Notes: generated from the sequence alone by a model not told the origin. DNA of 41,414 nt from Schmidtea nova (GCA_044892505.1 CM097883.1:395334587-395376000), one strand, 5' to 3'. Positions 17,210-37,358 are shown, counted from the stretch's first letter. A program made the numbers and translations.

Positions 17210-18665
17210 ATTAGATTAGATTAGATTCATTTAATTTGTCAATTATTTTAAAATTGAAGGAAATTATATAACATATTTTAGTTTAATGAAACTTGATTTA
17301 TTTTGATAAAAACAATTAGATGTTTTCCAGACGGCCAGTTCTGGAACCAATAAGTGCAGGGCCCGATTGAAATTTTTAGTGGGCCCTCGATATATTAAAT
17401 ATTTAAAAAAAATGCAAATCACACATATATATATATATATATATTTATTGATTAATTTAAATATTTGAATAATTTATCCTTAATCGTAAAAAGCAATTTG
17501 CTATAAATTTCCAAAAATAATTTTTGTTAATTTTGGTGGTGATACGGGGCCCCGATTGGTCCCAATCGCTCCAGCGCCTAAAATCCGGGCCTGTAGACTG
17601 CTTGAATTTACAGAAAAATAAATACTTTTTCATTATTTATCTTCCAGTGACCAAGATAGTTCTAGAATATTAAATCATTCATTAGTATCGGGGTTGCAAC
17701 TTTCGTTGCCGATACCCCTATAACAAAAGTTAATAAGATAAAATAAGAATGAAACATTTATTTAAAAGATCTTCTTTCGCTTCTTTAAAACTGCTTGTAA
17801 GTAAAATCTGCTTGTTAAAATTCTTGTAGGTTAAAATGCTTCTTGGTTAAAATTGCTAACGTTGTAATTCTGCTTATTTAAAATCTTGTGCGTTATGAAT
17901 TTCAATTCTCCATTTCTCTTGTTATTTAAAACAAAACCTTTATAAATCTCTATATTTTTATTTAATATACATATGTATATATAATATATTCAAATTAATT
18001 ATTATTTGAAACGTTAAGTATTACTTTTCATTTATCATTTATACACATTTTTTGATTTTCGGATGACTGACTGATTTAAATAAGGATTTTTTAATGTGAT
18101 ATTAAATGCAATTTTTAAAAGCAGACGCGTTTCGCGATTATTTGGCTCTCATTAGTCTCATGTAAGAAATTTGATTTAACCGGAATCGAACCCAGCAACT
18201 TTGTAACCAGATCAATGGATGATGAGTTATTCATACGCCTTATTTGTAACATATCAAGTGTATTTCCATACATTTGATGAAAGCGGTTCAAATAAATTGT
18301 GATATTTGATTCCCATAGTAGTATGACTATAGATCAAAATTATTTTTCTGGTTTTTAAGTACAAAATATTTCGGCACTTGATAAAGGTTGTGCTAAAATA
18401 TTGCGTACTTAAATAACCAAAAAAAATTTTTTTTATCTATAGTCATATCATTATGAAAATTATTGATATAAATAAAAAGAGACAAAAAAAGATAATTGAT
18501 AATTATAACTGATTTGTCTTGTTAGGGGGATTGATCAAACTCTAGATACTGGTCATAATGTTATTTGGTTCGATTCAAGGTTGGATCGAGTTTCGTACAT
18601 GGCACTGATGAGAGCCTATAAGCTCGCAACGCATATGTCATTAGAAATCACATTAAATTGTTATG

Positions 18666-18711
<46 letters not shown>

Positions 18712-21700
18712 GAAATTGTAAAATAAAATCAAGAAATATTTTAGCAAACTTTATTGGAGACTTGCTATTGTAATTATCGTTACTGGGACCGGTAAATAAT
18801 GAAGAAATAGAAATTATGGCAAAAAACTTATTAATTCTAGTGACCAGATCAATATCGGTTGAAATGTTCTGTGAACAATTGTTATTGTGCGTAGTGTAAC
18901 AAATCGCTGTCAACATATTATAATCAATAAATCCAAGGTGCAGATCAAACAAGTTTTTAACAAGCTCGTTGTGTTTGCTTTTTTTCAATTTTTTTGGCAA
19001 CTTTTTCCTTTTGACTACGAAATATACCCCCAAGCCGGTAAATTAGCTTCCGTTCCACGAGAATGATCAGAATGAAACAAATGATCGTTTCAAAGCTTTT
19101 GTTTAATTTTATGTCGTTGGGTTGGCATTTACCATGAAAACCATTGTCAGGATCGAAGAACTTTTGAAGTAATTACTAGATATCACATTCACAAGGTTTT
19201 ATTTTGTAAATAAACTCTTTCATAGTTTCGACAACTGTTGAATTCAGACGTATCTGAATGATGTTTACCTTACAGCTATATAAGGTGAATGCTGAGAATC
19301 CTTGTTATCAATATCAAAAATTTAGGACTGAAAGGGTTACTGGTAATCCTTCATGCTTGAGGCGAATTCTCCAGTTCTACTGAAAGTAGAATTATGTCGT
19401 GTCTTAAAAATAAAGTTCTCTTTCTCCCGATTCAAGAGAATTTATAGTTTGAAATATTAATTAGGCATAGGTGAAGGTTTGTTAACATTTAGAGGAGTGT
19501 CAACTGGTAAATGTTGCTGGAAAGATTTTTGAAACCATTTTGAAACATGATAAATAAGAGGCCGACTTATTTACTGCGTATATAATCGGATCGTTTGAGG
19601 GATATTTGTGCAGCTTGTCATAGGTTGGGAAGTTTTGTTATTTATGGATGAACGGACATAATGCACTATTGTGACTTATCACAGACCATTATGGTGCTAA
19701 GGTTTATTTAAAAGGTAGAGGCAAGAGAAGTAGACAGAGTAGAGAAATATTGATAGGACTGGACCAAATTAAAATATGCGATGTCAATGAAATTGTTCAA
19801 AGGAGATAAAAAGAATAATACTGTAGAAATTAGATAATAAATTACAAAATCCAAACGAATCATTAAGGGAATTTGTATATAGTTTAACTATCTTAGCCGA
19901 CGAAACATTTGAAGTCAAGACTGAACAGGTGGAAATGTTTGTAATGTTCGTCAACCCTTCTGGACTCAACAAATTCTGTTTGAGGCGTATTTGATATGTA
20001 TACAAGAAATGCAGTGATATTGTACAGCAGTGTAATATTATAAAAATAGAATAAATAATTTTTATTTAAAATAATTTTTATAATTTTTATATCAAAGATT
20101 TCACAAAAAATATATTTATTACACCTATTTATCACAATTTTTATTTCTTTGACGCATAATAAAGTCTGTGATTTTCAATTGTCTAGATGCTTTTTCTCCT
20201 TGAATTTCATCAGTCAAATCCCATATTTTGTTTATCCTATCAGGAATATTAGCTTGGAAGTATTTTTCAAGTTTTCTTGTTTACTCATAGGCTTCGAAGA
20301 GGTTGAATAAAAGATGGCGTATTTTGTGGGAAAAAGAATAATTCGATATTACGCAATTCAAAGTCTTTTGGGTGAATAAGTGCGTTATCTAACAATAATA
20401 AAGTTTTCCGATCCTCTGCTTTCATTATAATGTTTAAATCTTTTAACCAATCGTGAAAAATTGTCAACGTCATCCAAGATTTTGTATTTCAAAGATAATA
20501 AATAGATCATTTTTCTATATCGAAATTTTTAAAACAACGAGGTTTCTTCAACCTGCCTATCACTAAAGGCTTGAGAACAACCTTTATCTTCATTGAATAA
20601 TTTTAACAATTTCTGTTTCTCTTCGATGCTTAAATCCTTTCTCTTTCGTTTTGAATTTGTGTTTTTCATATTTAAACAAGAAATTGTATAAATTAATGAT
20701 TTATTTTACTCTTTTATTTTGTTCATTGTTCAAAGTAAACATTGTTCATATTATAAAACATAATTTCCCTTGAAAACTATATGATTCCAAATAATTTTTG
20801 ACTTAAATGTTCATACTAAGAAGGGTTAACTGTATATATATATATATATATATATAGAAACTTTTATATATTCATATTTACAATTACACTGACTGACTGT
20901 TTTTACAATGCAATAAGTGATATTTTGTAAAATAAATAACTATTTGTTCTTTTTTTAAATGTTTTTTTTTAATTTGTTAATTTATATCATAATATAATAC
21001 AATAATATTCACTTTTTGACACCTTAATTACCGGTATTAAATTCAGAGTTTTACCGATTTTCCGGCAATTTTATACATGAATTTGTACAATTTATTTTAT
21101 TGTTAATTTATTTCTATTGTTAATTTTGTATTTAGTATAGTGGGATGGACAACAATAGACTGGAGTGTGGACTAATGACTAACCACTATTACAATATTAC
21201 CGGAATCAAAGAAATGAATATAAAAAATTCATCTTTGGTAACCATTTTTAATAAAGAAAAGTTAATGATGACTAGATTATGCCATCCGTCTTGGGACAAA
21301 CAATGGAATGGTGCATTTACAGAGGGGTATTTTTCATGTTTTCTTTATTTTTATAAAATATTGAAAATAAACACATGTCGTTAGTATTATCAAATTAAAT
21401 TTAAATTTGGACTTACTTAAAATGTTATTAACATCTCTTTTTCAGCTTTGATCTTTTCTTTTTTATTTTCAAAAATGTTTAGTTTTTGTAAAGACTGCAG
21501 ATAAAATTATTTTTAAAGTACATGAATTTTCCGCACAGCCCTTTTCAAGTGTGTACTTTCACATATAGTTGAAAACATACCGAAAATTCATGTATTTTTA
21601 AAGAAAAATTACCTATTCTTTAAAAGATGAAAATTATTTAAAATGTGTTAAGAAAATATTTAATATAATTTAATATAATTTTTATAATAATAAAATATTT

Positions 21701-24700
21701 AATATAATAACCAAATATTATTTATTTCAATCACTTTTTAGTATTATCACGTTTGGTATTATTGCTTGTTCGGTATTTTCATTTGCAAGTGTTGCATCGC
21801 TCTTGATTTGCTCTTCAGAAATACTCATGTGAATCATAAATCTACTTCTTAATTTTTTGCTTATATAGTTTTTCCTTTTTTGGACACCACTATAACATGT
21901 TTTTTTAAATCAACCAAAATTATTTCGCTTTATTAAATAAATAATTGAAATACTTTTAAAATTTTAAAATTATTATAAATTATTTTACATAATGCGTGAC
22001 GTCAAAAACTAATATACGAAGTAGAATATAGAGTAGCATATAGAATGATGGAACCGTTACTTCAAATGCTTAGCGACTCCCTGTAGTTGGGTTTATTCAA
22101 ATTTTTAAACAGCACATTGCCATTGTTTTTTTCTGGGGACCAACGATCATTTCGTTTGATGTATTTGTTGGGTTATTGGATTGTTGGTGAAATTGAAATT
22201 TACTAATTTATTCTCTGAGTCCAAGCGTGTTTATTTGATCAATAAAATAACAATTAACAGCTGGAACCTTGATTGATGTCACAGCTGGTTTCACAAATTA
22301 CACTGGTACAACAAGTTCAATAATATGACAGATAATTACCCAGTGCTTATTACGACACTCGGTTAGGAATAGCACTCGTGTACAATATCTCCGTTTAATG
22401 ACCAATAGCTACCGATTCAGATTCAATAATGGGTAACTGACTAATTGCTTTCTTGCTTTGACATGAAAATTTGCTTAATAAACTTTGACTCTTGTTCAAT
22501 TAATTTCTTGGTTTGCTAAATTAACTACAATCTTCTCAAATTTTCCTTTGATCTACGTTTTCTAATAATACACCTTGATTCTTCTCAATTTAAATTTTCT
22601 CCGCAGATTTCCTTTTGAATCTCAACTATATCTTCTTTCTCATCTACTGTTGTTTCTTCCTTTTATAGCACGTCAAATTTTTGGTACTTGATATAATTTT
22701 GTTTTTCCATTTTTGCCTCTCACATTCTCGACAGCTCCTGCCTTAACTCTTACAGCTGTCGAGATATGCCCTGGTTCCCTTTTTTATTATTACGACTTTT
22801 TCACCTGCAATTCTGATATCCCTGACAAGCTTTCAAGATATGAACTTTCCTCTTGTTTTTGTTTTCCGATTTTTGGAATTCCTTTTCCTTTTTCTACTTC
22901 TTAATTATGAATGATCGTTTCTGGCTAATTGTTCGGTCTCTTTTATTTCGCTGCCATTTACTCATTTCTGAATTTTTTCACTTTTCTTCCTCCTTTCCCG
23001 TATTTTATAACATCGCATCATTTACCCTGTCCATCTTCCCCCAATCATTTTATTTATTTGTGATAATGTTTAATTTATTGTTTAGGTATTCTCAACATAT
23101 TTTTAATTAGTTGTAGGATTTCCTTATTAAACTGAAGTGGATCAATAACTCATAACTTTACATATATGCTTGAATCTGTTATTTATACAAAATCAATAAA
23201 TCGAATTAATTCAATACATAACACAACAAACATGCGACTAAAATAATTAAAAACAAATGCCAATCCAAATACATTCTGCACAATATATTTCGAGAACTTA
23301 ATTCTCTTCATCAGGTGCTACTCAATCTTCCATTCAAATATAAATCAAATAAATCGATTTTTCAAACGAACTAATATTAATTTTTAAAATAAAATGTATA
23401 TTTTATAAATTTTATAAAATAGTCAAAAAATTTATTACGATTAAAATTTTTTAATTTAAATAAATTAATCTTAAAAATATAATATTCTCTTTTTACAAAA
23501 AAATATTTTTTTAAGAATATATTATAAATATTTCCATATTTATAAACAACAGAATGATTGAAAACAAAATCCATAATCCCCAATTGAAAATGCTCTAATA
23601 CTCGAGTACAGAAAAGACGGTCAGTCTTGTCCAAAGTATGTGGCATTTCGCCCATGACATTTGAAAAATTAAACGAGTATAGAACACAAATCAAAAGAAA
23701 AAAATAAGCGTCATCAACAATCACATCATTTAATTTACTTAAACTGCAAAAAAATGAGGCAAACACACACACTCAAAACTCTCACACTCACATATTCAAT
23801 AAAAGAAATTTTTTATTATTTGAAGTCTTGGGTAATATACATCAATTTAAACATATATTACGGGAACTATTATCATAATTTTAATTATAATTGAGAAAAT
23901 AATTGTGAAAAATTATCGAAATTAAAATAAGTAATTAATTTTGCTATTACTTCGAGTTATGCGAAATTATTCAGAACTATTTGGGCTACCCAGCGCTGTG
24001 CGGGAAATTTGCAAAATACAAAATATTCCAAATGGCCCGTGCAGGGATGATTAACTAACAAAGAAAAGATAATTACATGAAAATTTCTTTATTTTCTTCA
24101 TTTCTGTACAAAAATCACAAAAACAAATACATTACTTGTGTCATTTTATTCACGAAGCAGCTTTTTTGTACACAACATTCTTCTACTGTAGAAGAGAGAC
24201 CAGAGACTTCTGCCGGATTTAATAATAAACGTTCTAAAATCGTCTATAAAAGCGAATTTTCATGTTATTTTTTCGGATATAAATTTTGACATTTTTCTCA
24301 ATAGTATAGTAAACTGGGCGAATTAGAAGTTCATTCGGTCTTCTACGTTTTCAACTTGAAAATTGAATATATTTGTCTACCTTTTACCCATAATTTGAAG
24401 TTTTATATACGGACATACAAGCACACATACTTTTATTTTTATATATTAGGTTATTTTTGAAATAACTATTAAAGTTTGTTTCATACTTATAATTCATTTG
24501 GTATTTGTATAATTTATGATTTTCACTTTCAGGGGTAAAGAGTGGCAATTACTTACTGCTTCTGAGAAATCTAAAATGGGCCAAACTTATTTAAATGATG
24601 GAGAATTCTGGTATTACATTTTTTTTGATAATTGAAAATCTAAAACAATTAATATTAAGTTATGTAATTTATTTATACACTAGAACCTCGATTTGCGTCG

Positions 24701-26998: not shown

Positions 26999-27092
<94 letters not shown>

Positions 27093-28408
27093 CCGGAGGG
27101 GCCCAAGAGTAATATGTAGTTACTCTTGAAGGGGTCCAAGGCTAAATTTTTATTTTATGATATTACATATTTTATTTTATTATATTATTTTATTTTATTT
27201 ATTTATATTTATTTATATTTATATTTATTTATATTATTTTTTTAAATTTATTTATTTATATTATTTGTATTTATTTATATTTATATTATTTTATTATATT
27301 ATTATATTATATTACATATTATATTAAATATGATATAATACGACACTAAATCCGTGCGATCTCTGACTCGTCATATCCTTTTTGATTTCAATGTTTTGTT
27401 TGTAAACGGTTGAAGAAAATCAAAGCCAACATTGTTTTTTTAAATAAAAATTTGAAAAATATTGTGCTTTCGTGAAATTTTTTATTTTATAATATTACAT
27501 ATTTTATTATATTATTTTATTTTANNNNNNNNNNNNNNNNNNNNNNNNNNNNNNNNNNNNNNNNNNNNNNNNNNNNNNNNNNNNNNNNNNNNNNNNNNNN
27601 NNNNNNNNNNNNNNNNNNNNNNNNNNNNNNNNNNNNNNNNNNNNNNNNNNNNNNNNNNNNNNNNNNNNNNNNNNNNNNNNNNNNNNNNNNNNTTACTTAT
27701 ATTAGATAAATATAATAATCTGCAAATAATTAAAAGATGTAATAAGTTTTTATAATAATAATAATAATAAATTTGGAGCCACACCAGTCGGGGGCCTAGA
27801 CTTCAGTTTTGTCAGTCTACGGGTAAATCCAGGTCTGTATGTGTGTGTGCAATTTATAGTGTATATCGTGTAGTGTAGTGTAAATAAATCATTAAATTCT
27901 TTAATCTTATTCACCTTTATTTTTTATCTATTTAATTTCTTTGGAGGATCAAATGTTTTTTGATCTGTTGTCTTTAAAAATTAAAAATAAATAATTAAAA
28001 ATATTAAATTCTATTCATAATTATTTAATTGCAGATCATAATGCCTATTGTGAAATTGAATGTGAAGGAGAAAATTATTTGACATCGATAATCAAAGACT
28101 CGCCTGCTCCTGAATGGGAAGAAGCTTTTCTATTTTATCGCATTAAGCCTGATAAACCAATTATTATTCGAGTATTAAAATATAATTATTTGAAATATCT
28201 TTGAGATTCTATTTAGGTGTTTCACAAATGCAAATTTCTAGATGATTTCCTTGGCTTAGTAGTTTACCATTTTGATACATCCAGCCTAAATAAGGAGCCT
28301 GTACTTATTAAGTCACCTTTAAAATATAAAGATCCGAAGAAAGCGGGTAATATGCCAGGATATTTAGAAGTTGCATTTTGGCATACTGATTCATATGTTA
28401 ATTTATAA
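4824..28408 (+). CDS. CAPN5: Calpain-5/6-like (TRA-3 type) protease gene, 5'-incomplete: join(4824-4905,16180-16284,21136-21326,24533-24610,26288-26567,26607-26818,26865-26992,28035-28171,28217-28408)
   Basis: The nine exons splice in frame with GT-AG introns and matching phases (1405 nt, ~467 aa plus TAA). They follow CAPN5 colinearly: LVGGYDAL..DFTGG, GLMTNHYYNIT, WNG..EW..DGEFW, domain III (QFYFEV, VERNR, GSYVI) and C2 (CEG, FLFYR, DDFLG). CAPN5 versus CAPN6 orthology cannot be fixed without a tree. Confidence 0.9.
5193..6441 (-). mobile_element. Mariner-type transposon, full length with a frameshifted transposase
   Basis: 28-bp TIRs CGTGGCGTGCCCAAAAGGTCCGTGCAAT (5193-5220) and its imperfect inverse (6414-6441), with TA on both sides. 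Minus-strand remnants RKLASRFVLRFL, ITQDET, FWDAHSVILVDF and HPPYSPDLAP. Confidence 0.9.
6905..7490 (-). pseudogene. 5'-truncated mariner DD34D transposase fragment (second, different family)
   Basis: ORF 6905-7429 reads LTIFWDCKGV...QHDNAKP-...-HPPYSPDLAPSDFYLF...LPARWQRCV. The D-D spacing is 34. No paired TIRs found. Confidence 0.9.
8280..10320. repeat. Older inverted-repeat (foldback/MITE) arms enclosing the DD35E element
   Basis: ATGGAAGTCAAAAAA near 8296 is the inverse of TTTTTTGACTTCCAT near 10293. Both arms carry AAATAGCCGAC-like subrepeats. Termini not defined. Confidence 0.4.
8704..10071 (-). mobile_element. Tc1/mariner-superfamily DD35E (Traveler-like) transposon, full length, lightly decayed
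   Basis: 27-bp TIRs CAGTCGCCGCTAATAAATTAGCATCAC (8704-8730) and inverse (10045-10071), with TA on both sides. Transposase 9872 to 8853: MGKRK..., FSDES, QHDGAPCH-...-WPGNSPDLNIIE, with 35 residues between D and E. At least 2 stops and 2 frameshifts. Confidence 0.92.
10780..11340 (+). mobile_element. Decayed retroelement coding remnant (probably Ty3/gypsy gag-protease junction), copy 1
   Basis: Nucleotide similarity to the reverse complement of 22400-22900 (GGAATT..CAAAA..GAAAACAAAAACAAG..ATCTTGA.AGCTTGTCAG). Both copies run into a QLPI motif. Confidence 0.45.
12150..12840 (+). pseudogene. Highly decayed pogo/Tigger transposase remnant
   Basis: Fragments LLDNAACH, LSPNTT, DKGAMSIFKSYF and KKAVQQTLDKY, in the order of the Tigger motifs DNAPGH, LPPNTT, MDQGVI..FK.YY and Q.TLD.F. 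Confidence 0.65.
12952..13715. mobile_element. Non-autonomous Mutator-like (MULE) element with long TIRs
   Basis: 12952-13126 and 13478-13654 are ~175-bp imperfect inverted arms with TAGTAAT subrepeats. The spacer encodes (minus) IAKKRKRKGRPT, resembling the KRKRGRP C-terminus of MULE transposases. Outer ends are approximate. Confidence 0.65.
14191..14565. mobile_element. hAT (Charlie-like) MITE nested in the outer hAT
   Basis: TIRs CAGTGATTCTCAACC and GGCTGAGTATCACTG. The 8-bp flanks CCTCAGTG and CCATAGTG match 6/8. Confidence 0.75.
14902..15802. mobile_element. Tc2/pogo-like MITE (CCGTA termini) nested in the outer hAT
   Basis: 25-bp TIRs CCGTATATAATCGTGTATAAGTCGA and inverse, 24/25 identical, with TA on both sides. 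Confidence 0.85.
15097..15564. mobile_element. Foldback-type MITE nested inside the Tc2-like MITE
   Basis: TTTAAATTGTGGCAATAT (15097) vs ATATCACGCCAATTTAAA (to 15564). Subterminal repeats are mirrored: ATGATCAGTA on the left, TACTGGTC on the right. Confidence 0.5.
16180..16284 (+). CDS. CAPN5: Calpain exon: IFDLSSNAELDKFLEVFDLLKTAYEDNALLGALVE
   Basis: AG at 16178-16179, GT at 16285. A 105-nt phase 0-0 exon equivalent to the calpain segment LF..L..A.....L.GCSI. Confidence 0.88.
16413..16785. repeat. Minisatellite, 13-bp unit ATTAATGAATTAT, ~28-29 copies
   Basis: An uninterrupted tandem array, directly readable. Confidence 0.97.
17154..17203. repeat. (TA)n microsatellite
   Basis: About 25 TA units. 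Confidence 0.97.
17357..17593. mobile_element. Possible hAT-like MITE
   Basis: Ends CAGGGCCCGATT and AATCCGGGCCTG, with GGGGCCC subterminal motifs. No TSD recognisable. Confidence 0.45.
18118..18240 (-). ncRNA. tRNA-like SINE/retrozyme copy A with degenerate type I hammerhead
   Basis: Minus strand: B-box GGTTCGATTC (18192-18183), then CTAATGA GAGC CAAATA ATCGC GAAA CGC GTC. Alignable along its length to copy B. Core and stems are mutated. Confidence 0.6.
18322..18447. repeat. ~126-bp imperfect palindrome
   Basis: TATGACTATAGAT (18322-18334) pairs perfectly with ATCTATAGTCATA (18435-18447). The inner arms GGTTTTTAAGTACAAAATATTTCGGCAC and GTGCTAAAATATTGCGTACTTAAATAACC also pair. Confidence 0.8.
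18525..18641 (+). ncRNA. tRNA-like SINE/retrozyme copy B with near-intact type I hammerhead
   Basis: Head GGGGGATTGATCAAA..TAGA resembles a tRNA-Ala 5' end/A-box. B-box GGTTCGATTC at 18567-18576. Hammerhead ATGGCA CTGATGA GAGC-CTATAA-GCTC GCAA CGC ATA / TGTCAT (18599-18641) has two deviations from consensus. Confidence 0.7.
20160..20832 (-). mobile_element. Internally deleted pogo/Tigger (TIGD-like) element
   Basis: Terminus TA-CAGTTAACCCTTCTTAGTATGAAC (minus, from 20832). N-terminal KRKRKDLSIEEK HTH remnant. ORF 20285-20473 reads FHDWL...LLLLDNA..H...FFPQNT..IQPL. Confidence 0.75.
21136..21326 (+). CDS. CAPN5: Calpain exon with the catalytic His position: YSGMDNNRLECGLMTNHYYNITGIKEM...RLCHPSWDKQWNGAFTEG
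   Basis: AG at 21134-21135, GT at 21327, phase 0-2. Aligns to CAPN5 GLVKGHAYAVT...RLRNPWGEREWNGPWSD. Confidence 0.92.
22080..22900 (-). mobile_element. Decayed retroelement remnant (probable Ty3/gypsy gag-protease), copy 2
   Basis: K/E-rich broken frame followed by QLPII..IG..ILYTSA (DTGA-like), VPAVN and EMIVG, the order of a retropepsin. Homologous to 10780-11340. Confidence 0.45.
23110..23760 (-). mobile_element. Penelope-like element 3' fragment (GIY-YIG remnant plus terminal-repeat region)
   Basis: Frameshifted VLYSF.KCHG.NATYFG/KTDRLFCTRVLEH...SVVYK matches the PLE GIY-YIG pattern VVYKF.C..C...YIGKT.R.L.TR..EH. A hammerhead lies on the same strand ~250 nt downstream. Confidence 0.75.
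23278..23318 (-). ncRNA. Minimal type I hammerhead ribozyme (Penelope type)
   Basis: Minus strand: GCAC CTGATGA A GAGAA-TTAAG-TTCTC GAAA TATA TT / GTGC. Stem I and II pair perfectly, the core is intact and stem III is palindromic (AATATATT). Confidence 0.82.
24533..24610 (+). CDS. CAPN5: Calpain exon: GKEWQLLTASEKSKMGQTYLNDGEFW
   Basis: AG at 24531-24532, GT at 24611, phase 2-2. Matches EEWQ.....E..KMG.T...DGEFW. Confidence 0.93.
24678..25471 (+). mobile_element. Tigger-derived non-autonomous element
   Basis: 25-bp TIRs CACTAGAACCTCGATTTGCGTCGTT and inverse (24/25), with TA on both sides. Internal remnant PDEDRSSKVTRSIESTINCYKEIYLEKK..QQTLDIFF is a Tigger C-terminus. Confidence 0.9.
25700..26110. 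mobile_element. Degenerate hAT-like MITE
   Basis: Left end CAGTGGCGTAGCTAG with GCCGCCC subrepeats at both ends. The right TIR is eroded. Confidence 0.4.
26288..26567 (+). CDS. CAPN5: Calpain exon (end of CysPc into domain III)
   Basis: ILFQDFIKYFSRV...TTWFESK...GQFYFEVNRPTGDSVLINVLQK...LLLYK. AG at 26286-26287, GT at 26568. Confidence 0.92.
26607..26818 (+). CDS. CAPN5: Calpain exon (domain III)
   Basis: VERNRQ...INNTRSIGLRYLLKQGSYVI...IRIYT. Follows a 39-nt GT-AG intron. Matches VEENRQY...INSRSVFLR...GRYVI...LRVFT. Confidence 0.9.
26865..26992 (+). CDS. CAPN5: Calpain exon (linker and start of C2)
   Basis: FLISESFRKAPLLCPCFEIEACVITRLRVVKAYEM. A 46-nt upstream intron; donor GTAAGA at 26993; phases fit. 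Confidence 0.85.
27002..27087. repeat. (TA)n microsatellite, ~43 units
   Basis: A perfect dinucleotide run starting 9 nt after the splice donor. Confidence 0.97.
27525..27692. other. Assembly gap (N run) inside a calpain intron
   Basis: 168 N characters. Confidence 1.
28035..28171 (+). CDS. CAPN5: Calpain exon (C2 domain)
   Basis: HNAYCEIECEGENYLTSIIKDSPAPEWEEAFLFYRIKPDKPIIIR matches NSYVIIKCEG...PEY...FYRKK..QPITVQ. Confidence 0.92.
28217..28408 (+). CDS. CAPN5: Calpain terminal exon (C2 end, stop TAA)
   Basis: VFHKCKFLDDFLGLV...NMPGYLEV...NL* matches CAPN5 VWNHRVLKDEFLGQV...NLPGTVAV. Follows a 45-nt intron. Confidence 0.92.
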   Translation: MFHKCKFLDDFLGLVVYHFDTSSLNKEPVLIKSPLKYKDPKKAGNMPGYLEVAFWHTDSYVNL

Positions 28409-28526
28409 CCTTTTTATATAGTATATTGACAAATTTATTTGGTATTCTGGTGCTTCAATATAGTAATGGCTAGAACTTATATTACAGCTTTTATTTTCAA
28501 AATTTGCAATGAGTTTTATGAATTAG

Positions 28527-28696
28527 NNNNNNNNNNNNNNNNNNNNNNNNNNNNNNNNNNNNNNNNNNNNNNNNNNNNNNNNNNNNNNNNNNNNNNNNNN
28601 NNNNNNNNNNNNNNNNNNNNNNNNNNNNNNNNNNNNNNNNNNNNNNNNNNNNNNNNNNNNNNNNNNNNNNNNNNNNNNNNNNNNNNNNNNNNNNNN
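28527..28696. other. Assembly gap (N run)
   Basis: 170 N characters. Confidence 1.
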
Positions 28697-30160: not shown

Positions 30161-30860
30161 TGGCACGCAACCACAATCAAAAAAATACTCATCATCTTCT
30201 AGCTCAAAACCTTTATATGTTAGCACAATTATTCCGCCATTGCCTATAATTTCTGTTGCTCTCCGTCGTAATTTAGTCACTTTTTATACACCAATGTTCA
30301 TCTGTTTATTCTATACCTCGATCATTTATCCTTAATAAAATTACGAAATTCCTTCTTCACTGAAATTTTGTCCAAATTTTCGAATGACAGTTTTTATTGT
30401 TTCACCATACAAAGGTTTCATAATTTACATCAAGCCTAACACAATCTACAATTTTTAATTTATCTTCGAGTTCAAAATCTAAATCTAAAATATCATTTAT
30501 TTTATCATTAATCTCACCTGCATTTCCTTAAAATAACATTTCCATTAATCCAAATTTAATTGCGTGAAAATTATTGTTAACTGTTTTCTCATTGACAACT
30601 AAATTCACTATTTGCACATCATTTTCAAAACCAGGAATCAATCCACAATCTACCAAATATTCGTCAATTTTTAGACCTCTGCCCATAAATCTAAGTTCCA
30701 CTGCCCAACCTTCAAATTTGTGCATCACTTCTCTTTTCATCTTATGTACTTGTTCATATGTTTCAATTTTTTTTTTGAATTTTGTGCCATATAATGTCTT
30801 CATTTTAATAAATATAAGGTCTGACCATTTATTCCTTTTGTTGGCGTTGTTGTTGAACAA
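30161..30860 (-). pseudogene. Decayed intronless ORF with tandem ubiquitin-like domains
   Basis: ORF 30528-30860 has IFIKMKTLYG...LRFMGRGLKIDEYLVDCGL. A second unit (30421-30161) has MKPLYG...LTYKGFELEDDEYFFDCGC. Both follow the ubiquitin pattern KTLTG...LIFAGKQLED...LSDY. In-frame stops are present. Confidence 0.6.
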
Positions 30861-30869
30861 TTCGGAATT

Positions 30870-31753
30870 GATTTACTAGGGGAGATGATGTTGAACACCT
30901 CCATAAAATGCCTTGACTTCGATCATCCCCTAGACCCTCCACGTTAGAAATGCGCATTTTGTCGTATGCCAAGCAGGCAGATGAGCTGCGTAGACGGCGA
31001 CTATTCCTTGCTCGCACCCACTCAGGTTCTGACCAATAGAAGGTCTTCACTCTTTTCGTTTCAGGTCATACGGTCTCTCTTTTTCGTGTAATTATTCCGA
31101 GTTGATTTCCAATGATGTTAACACAATTTTAAAACAATACATTCACTCTAATACATTTATTTAAACAAAGAAATTGAGTTCCAATTTTAATGGAATAATC
31201 TCTGCTATCAGATCAAATACTGCTAAATCACTTAAGCGATCAATTTGAGACGCTAAATGTTGCGACCATACCATTTTCTGTTTTCGGCGCTTAGACCCAG
31301 TGCGCTTTCTCTTTGATCCGCAGATCGGGGTACTTCCGACTTGTGCCGATTGTTTGGGGATGAACGGCGTTTCCATGAGTAATTCGGACTTGTCCGTTCC
31401 AACCGAATGCATATTTCTCTCGCCTTTGGTTCAATGTCAAAGATAACCAGTCGGATGCATGCCCTCAACTTTGTTTTAATAAATTACCGGGTCACTCGTT
31501 TGAGACTATTCCTCAATTCTAGCCTGGCTGCGCTGAGTTCCATCTATACTTCCACTGGTGCTTGTTTTTCACGCTCTGTTTTTACCAATTATTCCCTTAT
31601 TTGCTCGGGTGAAAAGGATCGTCGTTGTAGTTCCTCGTTCTGTACCGTCAATCGTGTCACCTGTGACATTACTTTCTTAGTCTCCTGCTCCCAATATCTG
31701 TCGTCTAACTGCTCGACCCTCCGTTGATTCGGTACCTTAAATTTTTCTGGCAT
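30870..31753 (-). mobile_element. Decayed gag-like ORF of a probable LTR retrotransposon
   Basis: GC-richer block. The frame from ATG 31753 (MPEKFKVPNQRR...) is coiled-coil-like with several stops, and lies just downstream of the LTR-like segment. No diagnostic motif. Confidence 0.4.
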
Positions 31754-31858
31754 TTTCTGTAAAAGAAATTAACCCATGATTTATCGATTAGCAATACTCA
31801 AATACATATTATGACTACAAAACAAATAAAGGTAAATATTTAGCCTCTGGCGGATAGA

Positions 31859-32079
31859 TGTTGCCGAGATGTCTTTCTCTTTACTATAAATCTTTTCTTT
31901 GGAGCCCCGGATTTCGATATCTTGGTGATACCCTTAAATTTATTCGTCAAAGGCTCTAAATACGCTCCCCTTGTCGTGCGGTTTATCTTATTCTATTCGC
32001 ATCTTTTACCCCTTCTTACTTATTTCACTCAATTTATACTAGATAAATGGAATAACACAAATTTATTTTAAATGTAACA
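31859..32079 (-). mobile_element. Candidate LTR (221 bp)
   Basis: On the minus strand it starts TGTTACA and ends GGCAACA (TGTT...AACA), contains AATAAA and precedes the gag-like ORF. No partner LTR or clear PBS found. Confidence 0.4.
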
Positions 32080-34170
32080 CATTAGGTTATCAACCAGGTC
32101 TATACTCAAATTTGCTTTTTATGAGAATACCCAGTGAACATGGGCTTGCTCTCTCACCAAAGTTTGCTCGGGGTGTTTCCTTCTCCAGCTCTGCAACGCC
32201 CTCTCCTAAGCCTCTCTGAGGGGTTGTGGTGGGTCAATAAACACGAATCCTAAATCTTTGAATGTCTGTAGAGAAATGTGCCCATAATAAAGCACTTTAC
32301 TGGGTCGATTTTGTCAGTCCTTGATGATGATGAACCATTTGCTAGATCCAGCTGGATGTTCCAGGTCGAAATTCATTTTCCATCCCGGTCCTCCCCAAAA
32401 CCAGACTTCCTCATTTATATTACTCACCCAATACGAAAATTAGCAATGCACCTTCAATTCAGCGTGCCATTTTCTTATCTGCACATCGACCTGTCTAGTG
32501 ATGTCTGGAGGGAACTCCTTCTGCGGGCCCAGTACCCATTTACGTTGGGCTTCCATGTGCCTTTTGACTGCAACTCGGCCAGATTTTTCTCTTGAGCCCA
32601 CGTGGTTCCAATCTTGTCCTCAATGTCAATCGTTTCCACTACTTGTCTTTGACTAAATAATAAAAAATAATTTTTTACATTTGATTAGGCAGTGACCAAA
32701 TTGTCTCAAATAGTGGGATGTTCGAATTCATACTAGAAGATCCGGTTGACGGAGGAGTTGCTCCCAATTTGATCATCAAACCTGTTAATTCCCTCCTAAC
32801 TAATATCGTGACCCCGACTTGCTTACTGGAAGTTTTTGGTGGTACGCAAATTCCCCCAGAAAAACAAATTGTCTGATTCCCTTATCACTTCAATTTGCTA
32901 TCTCGAAATTGGTTGCTAGGAACAACAAAAAGATTTTCTAACATAAGATTTCAAATGATCACCCATTGTCTAATCAAAATGACCCTAAATCCTTTACGCA
33001 AAGTTCTTCCTACCAGTCCGAAGTGCAACCATCCCCACAGTAACTGAAAATTCATAAATATTATCACCATAACGTGGAGCTAAAAAGCCCCATAATTATG
33101 GAATCACCCTAGCAGTTTTCGCTTCAAAGGACTCCTCTATATAGTTTAACATATTTTAAATAATTAATCAAAAATTCAATGAATGAGAATAATATATTTA
33201 CGGTGATCAAAACACGAGAGCAACATAATAATATCATAATAAAATCATAGTAAAATCACAAAATTTACCTAAAGTGATTCCGCGTAAAAATTGAAAACTC
33301 GATGAAATTGTCAAAATCAAGATCTGTTAAATAGCTTGAGTTTGAAACAAATCGGTAATATTCTGATTCTTATGGTTTTAGTTCAGTATTTATACTGATC
33401 TGGCTCGTTAACGAGCCAATCAGAATCGTTCTACCACTCAAAGTAAGTCGGTTTTTTATTTATTTATTGTAAATGTTTTGATGGACGTTCTAGATTTCCT
33501 GTTCTGTGGATCATCGTCCATTAATTATTTAATAAAACGTATTTTTATTTCACCTAATTTCTTAGATTGTATTTAATTGGTTCTAGATTCCTTCTATCCC
33601 TTGGATCCCCATTTATTTCTATTTTAAATTTCGGAACTGGTAATTTTTTCACTTATTCTCTTTTAATTATTATTTTATTTACAGTTTTTACCGACTAATG
33701 ATGGTTGATTTAAGGTATATTTTACGATTTATTCATTATATATTTTTTTATTATTTTCTTAGTTTTAGGTGGTTTCCTCAGGTCAACACCTTGAAGAGTG
33801 ACCTAATATTTTCATCAGGTTTTTAAATACATTTTGACTGTTCCTTGTGCTTGTTTCATAACCAACTGCACAAAATTTGATCATGGTTTTAGGTTTTTTT
33901 TTAAATTCAAAGATTATTTCGTAAATTTCGTAAATATTTCTATCAATTTCTGAGAGTTACCTCTGAATCTGCAACTAACTTTCTGATTTTGGCAATAAAT
34001 ACTGTACTTGTCTCATTTTGCAAATCATCTTTAGTTTTATTGTCTGATTCTGACCCATCTTCCATTAATTCTTGCTAACTCATCATATGCGTATCAGTTT
34101 CTTCATCTGACTCAGATTTTTACAGTAATCTATTCAACTTCTTATTCAGCTGTTCTCTAAAGTTATCTTT

Positions 34171-34452
34171 CTAAATAAAGGCTATATTGTTAGGTCTCTT
34201 TAATATTGGCGTTTCAAAATTTTTGGAATTCCTGGGACAGGATCTAGCAATATGTTCATAATCTCTACACAAAAGACATTGAATTTGCCCATTTACATTT
34301 ACATTGTCTCGTTGTAGGGATGGTGAAGTTGGTGAACTCGATTTTGAAAAACAATTTCTAGAAACTTGTACTTTTTTACCACAGACATAACAATGAACCT
34401 CGTTAAAATTTGGTTTATCATCAGGAACTACTCTCCGGAAATTTGTTCCCAC
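34171..34452 (-). mobile_element. Retrotransposon gag fragment with two zinc knuckles
   Basis: CYVCGKKVQVSRNC (His lost) and CLLCRDYEHIARSC fit the CX2CX4HX4C spacing. Confidence 0.8.
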
Positions 34453-35800
34453 ATCATTTTTATGTCAATCTTGGATGTATGGGTCCAATTAGAGCCCAAT
34501 CAACTCGAGTAACAGAAGTCACTATATAGACTAAGTAAAAATTCTAAAATTCGCCAGTTCATGGAAGAGATATTCTAGTAAATTTAGAATTAACGAAGAG
34601 GTAAGAAATAGATCATCGAATTAAATCAAATCTGCGTAAAAGAAAGGGCATTTTCCTATTATGATATTTGCCCAATCGCAGCAAAAAGTGAAGACAAAAG
34701 AGTGTTATTGACAAATGTAAATTTTGTGCTAGATTAAATAAAAGTAATTTTATTGAGTGATTTTGATTGATTTTAAATAATAGCAGAAATTAATACCAAT
34801 TTAAAATAAAAACCCATCATTATTATTATAATTATGATGATTATCATCATAAACAATATGGGTATTCCGTGGTTATTATCATTTTTATTGGAGTTAACAA
34901 AACTATTTTCCTCATTGTAAATTATATGGTTATCATCATTTTTGTCTTTATTTATTACTACTGTTGTCAGTTATGTTCATAGGATTCATAGATAATTAAC
35001 GAAGGAACAGGTGGATGCTAGTATATAGTTATGGAATACTTTGTCCTCAGTTGTCAAGAGAGTCACTTGGTACGACTTACAAAACCGACTACCTTGAAAG
35101 TCTCGATAAACCTTCGGGAAAACCCTACATCCAATCTTCGACCAATGACGTTGTTAATGATTACAATTTCTCATGAACTTTTCGATCTTTTCGACCTTTT
35201 CCATTTCTCGATGATAAATTTATTTTATGAATTGGTTGATGATATCTGAATGTATAAATAATGATAAATGAGCATTAAATTGAATACTCTTATGCATTAA
35301 ATAGTTACATAATACTCATGAAAACGAAATTTTTGTCATTTAAATTTGAAATTTAGAAAATGGACAAAACCATAGAAACCATTTTTAGCACAATTGGCAT
35401 TGTATGGAGAGGGCAATATCAGAATGTCAGCAAAATTGAGGCGACATAGTTCTCAGCCGAAAAGATGGACAAAGTATAACATCAGATACAACTGCTGTTA
35501 ATAAAAGCTGAAAAGGTGTTTACCGAAAAGAGAACTCTAAAAATAGTATTGCACGAACGTGATCCGACGATCCAACAATTACAGATCGAACATGGGATCA
35601 CGGCAGCAGTTTTGTCGAGGACTAGTAATCAGATGTCCGAATTTTTTCCGCTGTCCGCCGTCACTAGATATTTTCAATCACTTCCTCATCTTTCAATTTT
35701 TTAACAACTTTTAATAAAGTGAATATCTTTTTAAACTTACCAAATTATTTTGAATTTTTGTTTAAATGTCAATCGTTATTTTAAATACACTACTTTAAAT

Positions 35801-36321
35801 CAGCGCCGTGCTGTAACTTTTGGGGGCCCTGTGCAGAAACTAAAAAAATTTTTTTTTAATTTGAATTAATTTTTTATTGATTTTATTAAAAAAAATAATA
35901 CAAAGCAATTATAAAGTAATTTTTCTAGCTTTTTTGCTGGCAAATTCATTAATTATATCATTGTAATCAATTGCTCTGACTGTTGCATTTCCAATCGGCA
36001 GTATTGCCAATCCAGGAAGTCTTTCCTGTGACATTGTAGACCGTAGCTAATTTTCAATTAATTTTAGTTTTGAAAACGATCGTTCACAATGAGCAAAGGT
36101 AAAATGGGTACTGTTAAAATTATTCGATATATGATACATACATTTGGATCTAATTCTTCCAAACTTCTTTCTAAAATGTATTCCAAATTCTCCATAATAG
36201 TATAATTATCTTATTAAATATATTTTTGCTAATGGAGAAGTTTTTCCAATGTATTTAATATTTGGGGGCCCCTCAAAAATAGGGGGCCCAGTGCCATTGC
36301 ACTTGCGATAGTACGGCGCTG
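35801..36321 (-). mobile_element. hAT deletion derivative carrying the dimerisation-domain remnant
   Basis: TIRs CAGCGCCGTGCT and AGTACGGCGCTG. The minus strand reads RIILTVP..CERSFSKLKLIEN*LRSTMSQERL.GLAIL...IDYNDIINEFASKKARK. Confidence 0.9.
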
Positions 36322-36902
36322 TATTCTTTTACTTCACTTTCTATCACTTTATCTTTGGCTTATCATCAGGATCCCCAAAAACTTCTAGTTGCCACAGAGC
36401 AATACTACAACATTTTTCATGAAGTGAAATAGTAAGGCAATGCATGTAAAACTTAGAACTTCTTTGAAAATTGAGTTTTATTTGAAAAATTATTTATCAG
36501 TCTTTCTAGAAATGGCTAAATACATCTAATATTAGCACTTTGGCGGACAGTAGAAATTAGTTGTTGGAAAGTGAAGGGACATTTCTGGGAACCAATTTTG
36601 CAACTATATATGATAACGGTTTGTATTTCAATTGAAATCTTACTAATTGCTCATACATAAAAATAAAATGATTTTTAAATGATCATTTAAATTATATTTC
36701 AATACTTTATTTCGCATCTGCATATGCTGTTTTGTCCCAATACCTGAAAAAAATAAACGACAGCATCTCCCGTCGGGTCCTTATATTTTCTAATTTTATC
36801 GGTGGCATAGATATTCGCCTCTGCGCACTTTAAGTGCTCAACAGAAACTGTTTGCAAGCGCACCCGGCTGCCTTAGCTTTATTATTTCAATCACTTGAAA
36901 TA

Positions 36903-37245
36903 TCTTTTCAAAAAACATTTGTCGGATGACTTTTTGTTTTTAACAAGTAAAGTGCGCAGAGGCGAATAGGAAATTCATCCGCCATGTTTGCAAGTTACAG
37001 ATTATCTGTAAGACCTTGCATATTTTATTGATGTGAAATGCAGTGTACCAGGTATGGTATTTAACAAAGTTGTTTCGACTTTGCTTTATACTTACCTGGC
37101 GCGGAGAGAAATTTTCGCGTCTCCTGCATAGCACGGATGAGAGCCAAAAGCTCGAAACTAGTCTGCTATTAAGGATTTGCACTGGGTATCACAAAGCTTT
37201 ACTTGTTAAAAACAAAAAGTCATCCGACAAATGTTTTTGAAAAGA
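36903..37245. mobile_element. Cassette bounded by ~50-bp near-perfect inverted repeats, containing a hammerhead
   Basis: 36903-36952 and 37197-37245 are reverse complements differing by one A in a homopolymer. Confidence 0.7.
37128..37169 (+). ncRNA. Type I hammerhead ribozyme motif (U4G variant)
   Basis: ATAGCA CGGATGA GAGC-CAAAA-GCTC GAAA C TA GTC / TGCTAT. Stem I is 6 bp, stem II is 4 bp and stem III is palindromic (ACTAGT). Predicted cleavage after C37163. Confidence 0.8.
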
Positions 37246-37358
37246 ATTTTATTCTTTATTAATAAACAAATAAACCTTTAATATTAAAATATTTGATTGA
37301 AAGTTTTCACTCAAAAAAGACTTTAAGGCAGAAAATAAAAAAATAAATAAATAAAATT

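What the first reader, a model, noticed from the sequence alone, without database searches (positions are those of the whole stretch)
18118..37190. One hammerhead module joined to different small-RNA-like heads (tRNA-like vs U1-like)
Seen: three dispersed motifs (18118-18165 minus, 18588-18641 plus, 37120-37190 plus) share a pre-core leader (TTTCGTACATGGCA / TTTCTTACATGAGA / TCTCCTGCATAGCA), a CTGATGA-type core, a GAGC-stem II and GAAAC(GC/TA)GT. Two also share the 3' flank (TGCTATTAAGGATTTGCACTGGGTATCACA vs TGCTTTTAAAAATTGCATTTAATATCACA). Upstream of the leader, two copies carry a tRNA-like A/B-box head and the third carries ATACTTACCTGG. Established: type I hammerheads with a short palindromic stem III occur in metazoan retrozymes, Penelope elements and the schistosome SM-alpha SINE. 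Inference: a mobile ribozyme cassette that swaps promoter-bearing small-RNA heads, which would be an unusual modular retrozyme/SINE system.
Basis: partly seen in the sequence, partly recalled or inferred. Interest (0 to 1): 0.78.

Follow-up and report, generated by a model that had tools for sequence, protein, structure and literature searches.

The report
Decayed hammerhead retrozyme copies, swapped insert
The three motifs are mutated, probably inactive copies of two related self-cleaving-ribozyme repeats, a known class of animal mobile element called retrozymes, which match each other except for one internal piece of about 66 bases: tRNA-like in one family and carrying the first 17 bases of the host's U1 RNA in the other.

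Summary
All three sites are type I hammerhead motifs with a 4-nt palindromic helix III, and they align beyond the universal core.

- **All three are probably dead.** Each has a mutation at a conserved core position: U4>G in copy C, G5>A plus a broken helix II in copy A, and A13>C in copy B.
- **Two repeat families.** A and B belong to an old dispersed family (about 1,000 or more copies, 75-85% identical) with tRNA-like A/B boxes. C is a diverged copy (86%) of a 381-bp family that forms long tandem arrays. That family has about 4,100 intact hammerhead modules and 3,163 exact U1-junction copies.
- **The "heads" are internal, not 5' heads.** The two families are collinear and homologous on both sides of a 66-67-nt slot whose contents show no similarity.
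- **The U1 piece is short.** It is 17 nt, identical to the host's U1 5' end, carries no promoter, and is predicted to be paired in a hairpin.
- **How they insert.** Both families insert as inverted, 5'-truncated pairs, as Penelope-like elements do.

Verdict: animal non-LTR retrozymes (Sm-alpha-like), a known kind, with a modest new twist in the same-size insert exchange. Other windows of this scan have already reported the U1-bearing repeat. The assembly gaps lie at least 8 kb from every element.

The parts
18049..18211 (-). Copy A: 5'-truncated copy of the dispersed tRNA-like-slot hammerhead repeat (family A). It starts inside the slot, at consensus position 71.
   Evidence: 85% identical over 164 nt to the family consensus. 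29 further loci at 75-84% identity.
18182..18192 (-). B-box-like GGTTCGATTCC in copy A.
   Evidence: Read directly. Conserved in the family alignment. No tRNA called by ARAGORN or by the Rfam tRNA model.
18112..18170 (-). Hammerhead motif of copy A, degenerate. The core reads CTAATGA (G5>A), helix II is broken (GAGC/TCGC), and the helix I strands no longer pair. The predicted cut site follows C at 18124.
   Evidence: No Rfam hammerhead match even at E<=10.
18212..18312 (+). Copy B, 5' part: the conserved 5' block and the 5' strand of helix P. It abuts the truncated 5' end of the inverted copy A.
   Evidence: Alignment of 14 full-length 5' regions. BLAST of the consensus to 18272-18310.
18313..18509 (.). 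Unrelated foldback (MITE-like) insertion that splits copy B. It is not part of the ribozyme element.
   Evidence: Inverted arms 18309-18354/18415-18460 and 18336-18377/18390-18431. A similar hairpin is seen in L050:516-608.
18510..18658 (+). Copy B, 3' part: tRNA-like slot (B-box-like at 18567-18577), hammerhead and the 3' strand of helix P. It ends at a (CA)n(TA)n microsatellite (18668-18712).
   Evidence: 81% identical over 150 nt to the consensus. Sequence read.
18590..18653 (+). Hammerhead motif of copy B, degenerate. The CTGATGA core and helix II are intact, but GAAA reads GCAA (A13>C at 18627) and the helix III/cut-site region reads CGCATA.
   Evidence: Hammerhead_HH9 21.2 bits, E 0.017, below the 52-bit cut-off.
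36811..36952 (-). Inverted, 5'-truncated fragment of the 381-bp family (family C), head to head with copy C.
   Evidence: BLAST of an array dimer: 89.6% over 144 nt on the minus strand. Sequence.
36933..37249 (+). Copy C: a solo, diverged copy of the 381-bp tandem hammerhead repeat (family C).
   Evidence: 86% over 332 nt, E 1e-108, to an array monomer. Arrays with a 381-bp period and 99% matches.
37048..37060 (+). Splice-donor-like CCAGGTATGGTAT, predicted to pair with the U1-like stretch.
   Evidence: Fold of the array monomer. Sequence.
37088..37104 (+). 17 nt identical to the 5' end of the host's own U1 snRNA (ATACTTACCTGGCGCGG).
   Evidence: Real U1 genes found with RF00003 at 104-112 bits. 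Sequence and alignment. Whole-genome counts.
37120..37175 (+). Hammerhead motif of copy C. Helices I and II and the cut site GTC (cut after 37163) are intact, but the core reads CGGATGA (U4>G at 37135). The array copies read CTGATGA.
   Evidence: Hammerhead_HH9 24.3 bits, E 0.00095, below the cut-off.
37178..37188 (+). 3' strand of long-range helix P (TGCACTGGGTA). It pairs with 37036-47 and encloses the slot.
   Evidence: Fold. The equivalent helix in family A is seen.

Best explanation
The window holds decayed copies of two sister families of non-coding, hammerhead-bearing retroelements of the animal non-LTR retrozyme type (Sm-alpha-like).

**Shown.**
- Both families have the same layout: 5' block, 5' strand of a long-range helix P, a 66-67-nt slot, a type I hammerhead, the 3' strand of helix P, then a tail ending near GTCATCC.
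- The hammerhead has a 6-bp proximal helix I, an internal loop and a 4-5-bp distal helix I. Helix II is 4 bp, and helix III is a 4-nt palindrome inside a 6-nt self-complementary stretch.
- Everything except the slot is homologous between the families.
- The slot holds a tRNA-like A/B-box segment in the old dispersed family A. In the young, array-forming family C it holds a hairpin, one arm of which is the first 17 nt of the host's U1 snRNA.

**Inferred.**
- Transcripts with two or more units fold so that two hammerheads share an extended helix III. They then cut themselves to unit length and are probably circularised by a tRNA ligase.
- The units are copied back into DNA by the reverse transcriptase/endonuclease of Penelope-like elements. 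This would explain the tandem arrays and the inverted 5'-truncated partner copies.
- The slot contents were exchanged by capture of host small-RNA sequence, through template switching or recombination.
- The three window copies are relics with core mutations that should abolish cleavage.
For: **Family C.**
- Arrays with a 381-bp period and 99% matches carry a canonical core.
- The module is found 4,108 times exactly, against 0 for the control.
- The monomer RNA folds at -121.3 kcal/mol, z = -7.25. Helix I, helix II, helix P and the U1/donor-mimic hairpin all form.

**Family A.**
- 31 copies were aligned, and the consensus core is canonical.
- 1,078 genome matches at up to 3 mismatches against 21 for the control, all dispersed.
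- Only 21 copies have the intact 20-mer.
- Helix P is predicted in the consensus (z = -5.2) and in natural copies L062 and L057.

**Segment test, family A consensus against family C monomer.**
- 5' block: z = 6.8.
- Hammerhead: z = 16.
- Cut site to tail: z = 5.8.
- Slot, 67 vs 66 nt: z = -0.3, with 303 of 500 shuffles scoring at least as well.

**Compensatory differences between the families, read.**
- Helix I proximal: AUGGUA/UGCCAU vs AUAGCA/UGCUAU.
- Helix I distal: UUCU/AGAA vs UCCU/AGGA.
- Helix III: ACGCGU vs ACUAGU, both self-complementary.
- Helix P pairs in both families with different sequences.

**U1 piece.** 17 of 17 nt identical to the host's U1, with nothing similar further on.

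**Penelope-style insertion.**
- Minus-then-plus pairs sit next to each other in about 9 of 29 family A loci.
- The same is seen in 7 places among the first 100 family C hits, with no plus-then-minus pairs within 1 kb.
- Both window loci show it.
- Copy B ends at a microsatellite.

**Literature.**
- PMC4209133 describes this hammerhead architecture and its need to act as a dimer.
- PMC7229834 describes 150-450-bp tandem retrozymes and circularisation by RtcB ligase.
- PMC8557442 describes the inverted 5'-truncated copy and microsatellite bias of Penelope-like elements.
- PMC2770079 describes Sm-alpha as a tRNA-like SINE with a hammerhead.
Against: - No RNA evidence. The only runs that hold the repeat are contigs of unknown library type, so expression, cut ends and circles could not be seen.
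- No self-cleavage assay was possible.
- Rfam hammerhead models stay below their gathering score even for canonical array copies (27.8 bits against 52).
- No autonomous Penelope-like element with a matching tail or hammerhead was identified.
- The tRNA origin of the family A slot rests on box motifs and their spacing only.
- A U1 capture in the middle of the unit needs two template jumps or a recombination event. That is less simple than the 5' additions seen in SINEU.
Confidence: 0.78

Rival explanations
1. One reading: a mobile ribozyme cassette that acts as a SINE body and swaps promoter-bearing 5' heads, a Pol III tRNA head against a U1 head that drives transcription.
For: - A/B-box motifs with tRNA-like spacing (43 nt start to start) in the family A consensus.
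- U1 5' end upstream of the hammerhead in more than 3,000 copies.
- Precedent for U1-derived SINE heads in crocodilians (PMC4494074).
Against: - Both pieces are internal. Conserved, homologous sequence continues upstream of them.
- Only 17 nt of U1 are present, and snRNA genes have no internal promoter (PMC4494074).
- A Pol III transcript starting at the A box would lack the conserved 5' block and would meet a T-run about 45 nt after the predicted cut site (consensus).
- There is no formal tRNA call.
Confidence: 0.08
2. The U1-like stretch was never captured from U1. It is simply the complement of a splice-donor-like sequence, created when a hairpin formed by inverted duplication or by selection for pairing. 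Any perfect complement of a consensus donor looks like the U1 5' end.
For: The stretch is predicted to pair with CCAGGUAUAGUAU 27 nt upstream. Only U1 positions 1-12 take part in that pairing.
Against: - Identity to the host's U1 continues for 5 more bases (CGCGG) that lie outside the hairpin. That is about a 1 in 1,000 chance.
- The U1-side arm is a perfect match to U1, while the donor-side arm is imperfect.
Confidence: 0.15
3. No exchange happened. The two slots are homologous and have simply diverged beyond recognition, while the flanks were held by selection on RNA structure.
For: The slot lengths are almost equal (67 vs 66 nt), and the slot sits between conserved helices.
Against: - Slot similarity is no better than shuffled sequence (z = -0.3), although the flanks are 66-78% identical.
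- Each slot carries a recognisable but different host-like motif.
Confidence: 0.12

Closest known systems
Animal non-LTR retrozymes (Cervera and de la Pena 2020, PMC7229834; Li et al. 2026 preprint, 10.64898/2026.07.22.740005)
   Same: - Non-coding, AT-rich repeats of 150-450 bp in tandem arrays.
- Each unit carries a type I hammerhead.
- Proposed to depend on Penelope-like elements.
- The unit RNA is compact and highly paired.
   Different: - The unit carries 17 nt of the host's U1 snRNA.
- A sister family holds a tRNA-like piece in the same position.
- No RNA or circle evidence was obtained here.
Sm-alpha / Sj-alpha SINE-like elements of schistosomes (Ferbeyre 1998 and Laha 2000, as cited in PMC2770079)
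   Same: - A tRNA-like segment upstream of a canonical type I hammerhead.
- Thousands of dispersed copies.
- A similar loop 2 (CAAAUA) by my recollection of the Sm-alpha ribozyme. This was not tested here.
   Different: - Family A has about 125 nt of conserved sequence upstream of the tRNA-like piece.
- tRNA finders do not call its tRNA-like part, whereas tRNAscan-SE calls Sm-alpha copies tRNA-Gln.
- No sequence comparison with Sm-alpha was possible with these tools.
Hammerheads in the pseudo-LTRs of Penelope-like elements (PMC4209133, PMC8557442)
   Same: - Short palindromic helix III that needs a dimer.
- Partial tandems with an inverted 5'-truncated partner copy.
- Insertion next to microsatellites.
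   Different: - No reverse transcriptase or GIY-YIG endonuclease reading frame in these units.
- The hammerhead here is the canonical form with helix I/II loop contacts, not the minimal Penelope variant.
SINEU of crocodilians (Kojima 2015, PMC4494074)
   Same: U1-derived sequence joined to a non-autonomous retroelement, explained there by repeated template switching.
   Different: - SINEU heads are long U1/U2 segments at the 5' end of the element.
- Here only 17 nt are present, they are internal, and they are paired in a hairpin.
- The partner element is of a different type (Tx1 LINE there).

Membership tests
Type I hammerhead ribozyme (canonical metazoan form) | Conserved core: C3 U4 G5 A6 N7 G8 A9, then G12 A13 A14, with cut-site residue H17 after a 15.1-16.1 A-U pair. 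| tested here: met
   Met in the family C array copies and in the family A consensus. Not met in any of the three window copies: U4>G in C, G5>A in A, A13>C in B.
Type I hammerhead ribozyme (canonical metazoan form) | Helix I of about 6 bp open to the flanks, helix II of 4 bp closed by a loop, helix III of 1-2 bp with a small palindromic loop (PMC4209133). | tested here: met
   Helices I and II are predicted by MFE folding. Helix III is CUAG or CGCG inside the 6-nt self-complementary ACUAGU or ACGCGU.
Type I hammerhead ribozyme (canonical metazoan form) | Reaches the curated Rfam gathering score. | tested here: not met
   Hammerhead_HH9 scores 21-28 bits against a cut-off of 52. Nothing passes at gathering score. 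The shortfall lies at the near-absent helix III.
Type I hammerhead ribozyme (canonical metazoan form) | Self-cleavage. | not testable with these tools
   Needs in vitro transcription of dimeric constructs.
Animal non-LTR retrozyme | Tandem repeats of 150-450 bp, low GC, one type I hammerhead per unit, no LTR, primer-binding site or polypurine tract, and no coding capacity. | tested here: met
   381-bp period, 8.2 copies in L010, arrays of tens of units. Window GC is 26-37%. Family A is dispersed and not tandem, so it fits the Sm-alpha pattern better.
Animal non-LTR retrozyme | Unit-length linear and circular RNAs in tissues. | tested here: inconclusive
   The runs holding the repeat are contigs of unknown library type. 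The 381-nt 'goes back' joints fit tandem DNA just as well as circles.
Non-autonomous dependant of Penelope-like elements | Insertion structure: frequent 5' truncation, partial tandems, an inverted 5'-truncated copy at the 5' end, and microsatellite bias. | tested here: met
   All inverted pairs seen are minus-then-plus. Copy B ends at (CA)n(TA)n.
Non-autonomous dependant of Penelope-like elements | 3' end or hammerhead shared with an autonomous Penelope-like element of the same genome. | not tested
No Penelope-like reading frame was found among the window ORFs of 110 aa or more that were searched.
tRNA-derived SINE | 5' head recognisable as a tRNA with A and B boxes, placed at the 5' end of the element. 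| tested here: not met
   - The boxes are present with 43-nt spacing.
- ARAGORN of 33 sequences at a relaxed threshold, and the consensus only at 80%.
- The Rfam tRNA model gives no hit; mascRNA scores 17 bits, E 0.47.
- The segment is internal.
snRNA-headed SINE (SINEU-like) | 5' head made of a substantial part of U1 or U2. | tested here: not met
   Only U1 nt 1-17 are present and they are internal. The Rfam U1 model gives no hit on the repeat, while real U1 genes score 87-112 bits.

The most novel reading that the evidence does not exclude
The 66-nt position at the three-way junction next to hammerhead helix I is a true exchangeable accessory slot. These retrozymes would load it repeatedly with pieces of abundant host small RNAs: a tRNA in one lineage, the U1 5' end with a donor mimic in another. 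The loaded piece would be functional, for example as a Pol III promoter or tRNA-enzyme handle, or as a U1 snRNP or splice-site decoy that controls nuclear retention or processing of the circular RNA.
Probability: 0.12. Interest if true: 0.65.

Novelty: new variant of a known kind. Interest (0 to 1): 0.36.

Why it matters
If the same-size insert exchange is real, it shows that hammerhead retrozymes have a tolerated position where host small-RNA sequence can be taken up and carried to thousands of loci. That bears on how these circular-RNA elements obtain promoters or host-factor handles. It would also give a natural pair of sister families for testing what the accessory domain does. The three window copies themselves are inactive relics with no evident consequence for the neighbouring genes.

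Tried and rejected
- **Rfam at gathering score on the whole window:** nothing.
- **tRNA detection:** ARAGORN on the window, ARAGORN on 33 family sequences and the Rfam tRNA model gave no convincing tRNA.
- **A full U1 gene at copy C:** rejected. There is no Rfam U1 match and no alignment beyond nt 17.
- **RNA evidence:** the runs found are Logan contigs of unknown kind. Depth and joints cannot separate tandem DNA from circles or expression.
I used whole-genome exact pattern counts instead.
- **RNAcofold of two hammerheads:** gave a domain-swapped dimer, not a clean extended helix III, so I do not use it as evidence.
- **The 550-aa ORF downstream of copy C:** no Pfam family and no credible Atlas neighbour.
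- **Splicing of the slot as a mini-intron**, by analogy with the Penelope pLTR intron that ends at helix I (PMC4209133): no joint starting at the donor-like site was listed. This remains untested.
- **Consensus used:** the majority consensus of the decayed non-coding family A copies served only as an alignment aid.

Full report
**1. The observation**

The three motifs are at the stated coordinates. Each has the order expected of a type I hammerhead:
- 5' strand of helix I;
- a CUGAUGA-type core;
- a 4-bp helix II (GAGC...GCUC) closed by an A-rich loop;
- GAAA;
- a 4-nt palindrome (CGCG or CUAG);
- U-C and the predicted cut site;
- 3' strand of helix I.

Pairwise BLAST shows similarity well beyond the universal core:

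| Pair | Identity | Length | E-value |
|---|---|---|---|
| A vs B | 73% | 111 nt | 1.7e-13 |
| A vs C | 71% | 98 nt | 1.6e-8 |
| B vs C | 80% | 45 nt | 7e-7 |

Rfam finds nothing at gathering score. Copies B and C get sub-threshold Hammerhead_HH9 matches of 21.2 and 24.3 bits against a cut-off of 52.

All three window copies carry a change at a conserved core position:
- Copy C reads CGGAUGA (U4>G, position 37135).
- Copy A reads CUAAUGA (G5>A, position 18153). It has also lost two of the four helix II pairs and its helix I pairing.
- Copy B reads GCAA in place of GAAA (A13>C, position 18627).

From established hammerhead biochemistry, none of them should cleave.

The two assembly gaps (27525-27692 and 28527-28696) lie more than 8 kb from every element. 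They fall inside the finding's span only because the motifs are far apart.

**2. What copy C is**

A genome search with 37082-37195 returned tandem arrays at 97% identity over the whole query, U1-like stretch included. Tandem Repeats Finder gives a 381-bp period with 99% matches.

The array copies have a canonical core, CTGATGA-GAGC-CAAAA-GCTC-GAAA-CTAG-TC, followed by TGCTAT. Helix I has 6 proximal pairs, a 2x2 internal loop and 4 distal pairs.

The exact hammerhead module occurs 4,108 times in the 1.25-Gb assembly, against 0 for the reversed control. At most 21 of these are the family A type.

The window copy is a solo unit, 86% identical to an array monomer (36933-37249). An inverted 144-nt fragment (36811-36952) sits against its 5' end.

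**3. The U1-like stretch**

The Rfam U1 model finds real U1 genes in this genome at 87-112 bits. Their 5' end reads ATACTTACCTGGCGCGG.

The repeat carries exactly these 17 nt, or 20 counting three upstream T. An alignment shows nothing similar after that, and the Rfam U1 model does not match the repeat.

Genome-wide counts:
- The 17-mer occurs 3,687 times.
- In 3,163 of these it is followed by the repeat's own next 15 nt.

In the minimum-free-energy fold of the unit RNA (cut site to cut site, 381 nt), U1 positions 1-12 pair with a donor-like CCAGGUAUAGUAU 27 nt upstream. The fold is -121.3 kcal/mol, z = -7.25, and 0 of 100 shuffles fold as well. The stretch is therefore predicted not to be free.

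**4. What copies A and B are**

A genome search with copy A found dispersed copies at 75-84% identity. I aligned 31 of them.

The consensus has a canonical hammerhead (CTGATGA-GAGC-CAAATAA-GCTC-GAAA-CGCG-TC). It also has an A-box-like TGGTGGAGTGG and a perfect B-box GGTTCGATTCC, 43 nt apart start to start.

Genome-wide counts for the 20-nt module:
- 21 exact copies.
- 1,078 copies at up to 3 mismatches, against 21 for the control. All are scattered and none is in an array.

Formal tRNA detection fails:
- ARAGORN finds none in the window.
- ARAGORN of 33 family sequences at a 90% threshold, and the consensus only at 80%.
- The Rfam tRNA model gives no hit. The tRNA-like mascRNA model reaches 17 bits, E 0.47.

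"tRNA-like" is therefore a motif-level statement only.

**5. The "heads" are internal**

Extending the family A alignment upstream shows about 125 more conserved nucleotides 5' of the tRNA-like piece.

In the window this 5' part of copy B lies at 18212-18312. An unrelated foldback insertion (18313-18509) separates it from the rest of copy B (18510-18658).

Copy A (18049-18211) is the inverted, 5'-truncated partner, and it abuts copy B's 5' end.

The extended family A consensus is collinear with the family C monomer. A segment-by-segment global alignment against 500 shuffles gives:

| Segment | Length (A vs C) | z-score | Shuffles at or above observed |
|---|---|---|---|
| 5' block | 65 vs 63 nt | 6.8 | 0/500 |
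| Slot | 67 vs 66 nt | -0.3 | 303/500 |
| Hammerhead | 51 vs 49 nt | 16 | 0/500 |
| Cut site to tail | 61 vs 74 nt | 5.8 | 0/500 |

The two families are thus homologous units that differ by a same-size internal cassette.

**6. Structure around the slot**

In both families the sequence just 3' of helix I pairs with a stretch just 5' of the slot. I call the resulting long-range helix P.
- Family C: UGCACUGGGUA with UAUCCAGUGUA.
- Family A: UCGCAUUGAAUAUCACA with UUGUGAUAUUUGAUGUGA, in the consensus and in natural copies L062 and L057.

The slot therefore sits as a side branch of a three-way junction between helix P and helix I.

Between the families the helices differ by compensatory changes (read):
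- Helix I proximal: G-C becomes A-U and U.G becomes C-G.
- Helix I distal: U-A becomes C-G.
- Helix III: ACGCGU becomes ACUAGU, and both are self-complementary.
- A hairpin in the 5' block is kept with a different sequence.

These changes argue for selection on RNA structure in the lineages that produced both families.

**7. How the elements move**

In about 9 of 29 family A loci a second copy lies close by, always minus then plus. Among the first 100 listed family C modules there are 7 such minus/plus junctions and no plus/minus junction within 1 kb. Whole arrays also switch orientation this way, for example at C1:221.734 Mb. Both window loci show the same arrangement, and copy B ends at a (CA)n(TA)n microsatellite.

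PMC8557442 describes exactly this structure for Penelope-like elements: frequent 5' truncation, partial tandems, an inverted 5'-truncated copy at the 5' end, and microsatellite bias. PMC4209133 and a 2026 preprint (10.64898/2026.07.22.740005) link hammerhead repeats to Penelope-like elements.

I did not identify the autonomous partner.

**8. Mechanism**

Shown:
- the sequence families, their copy numbers and their layout;
- the predicted folds;
- the insertion structure.

Inferred from the literature on this class (PMC4209133, PMC7229834):
- Because helix III is only a 4-nt palindrome, a single motif is poorly active.
- Two motifs in a multimeric transcript form a shared, extended helix III and cut the transcript to unit length.
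- A tRNA ligase (RtcB) probably circularises the units.
- A Penelope-type reverse transcriptase copies them back into DNA.

Inferred here: the slot contents were exchanged by capture of host small-RNA sequence. Crocodilian SINEU shows a precedent for repeated addition of U1 sequence by template switching (PMC4494074). Here the piece is internal and only 17 nt long.

**9. What could not be settled**

The only sequencing runs holding the repeat are contigs of unknown library type, so they say nothing about expression, cut ends or circles.

Exact whole-genome pattern counts were used instead.

**10. Relation to earlier notes of this scan**

The U1-bearing 381-382-bp repeat was already reported and followed up on other windows of this genome (s1-399578, s1-399581, s1-388934, s1-411042). 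My independent tests agree with those notes on three points: the 17-nt U1 identity, the hairpin, and the Penelope-style insertion. One of them calls the genome a flatworm's, which I did not test.

Two things are new here: the characterisation of the tRNA-like family, and the demonstration that it is a collinear sister of the U1-bearing family, differing by a same-size slot. A search of the paper library for retrozymes together with U1 snRNA found only one unrelated review.

**11. Verdict**

This is a known kind of element, the animal non-LTR retrozyme or Sm-alpha-like hammerhead repeat. It is represented here by three inactive relics and has a modest new variant feature, the insert exchange. 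Its promoter-head-swapping SINE model is only partly supported.

Noticed in passing
window 18313-18509: A foldback (MITE-like) element with nested inverted arms is inserted into copy B between helix P and the slot. A similar perfect hairpin in L050:516-608 scores 45.8 bits on Rfam mir-31 (cut-off 51) on both strands. It is most likely a palindromic repeat and not a microRNA gene.
   Followed up: partly
window 6905-7429 (-) and 9615-9983 (-): ORF fragments with a mariner-type transposase DDE domain (PF01359, E 2.9e-14) and a transposase helix-turn-helix domain (PF13936, E 5.6e-8). These are DNA-transposon debris.
   Followed up: partly
window 38415-40067 (+): An open frame of 550 aa, about 1.2 kb downstream of copy C, with no Pfam family and no credible protein-atlas neighbour (best score 0.77). 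Whether it is a real gene is unknown.
   Followed up: partly
G000:C2:312959679-313028186 and C2:314005095-314031634: The host's U1 snRNA genes include long tandem arrays with a period of about 2.5 kb (87-91 bits). Higher-scoring copies lie in small inverted clusters on C1 near 508.47 and 510.99 Mb.
   Followed up: no
G000:C1:221728085-221740109 (L003-L030): A retrozyme array switches orientation once, from minus units to plus units, at about 221,734,000. The same head-to-head pattern seen in solo insertions thus occurs at array scale.
   Followed up: partly
window 18668-18712: A (CA)n(TA)n microsatellite lies directly at the 3' end of copy B. This fits the microsatellite insertion bias reported for Penelope-like elements.
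   Followed up: no
L010:1591 (array monomer): In the public runs most contigs read G where this array copy has A, in the distal helix I 3' strand (TTGAGG vs TTGGGG). The array sampled here is therefore a minority subfamily.
   Followed up: no
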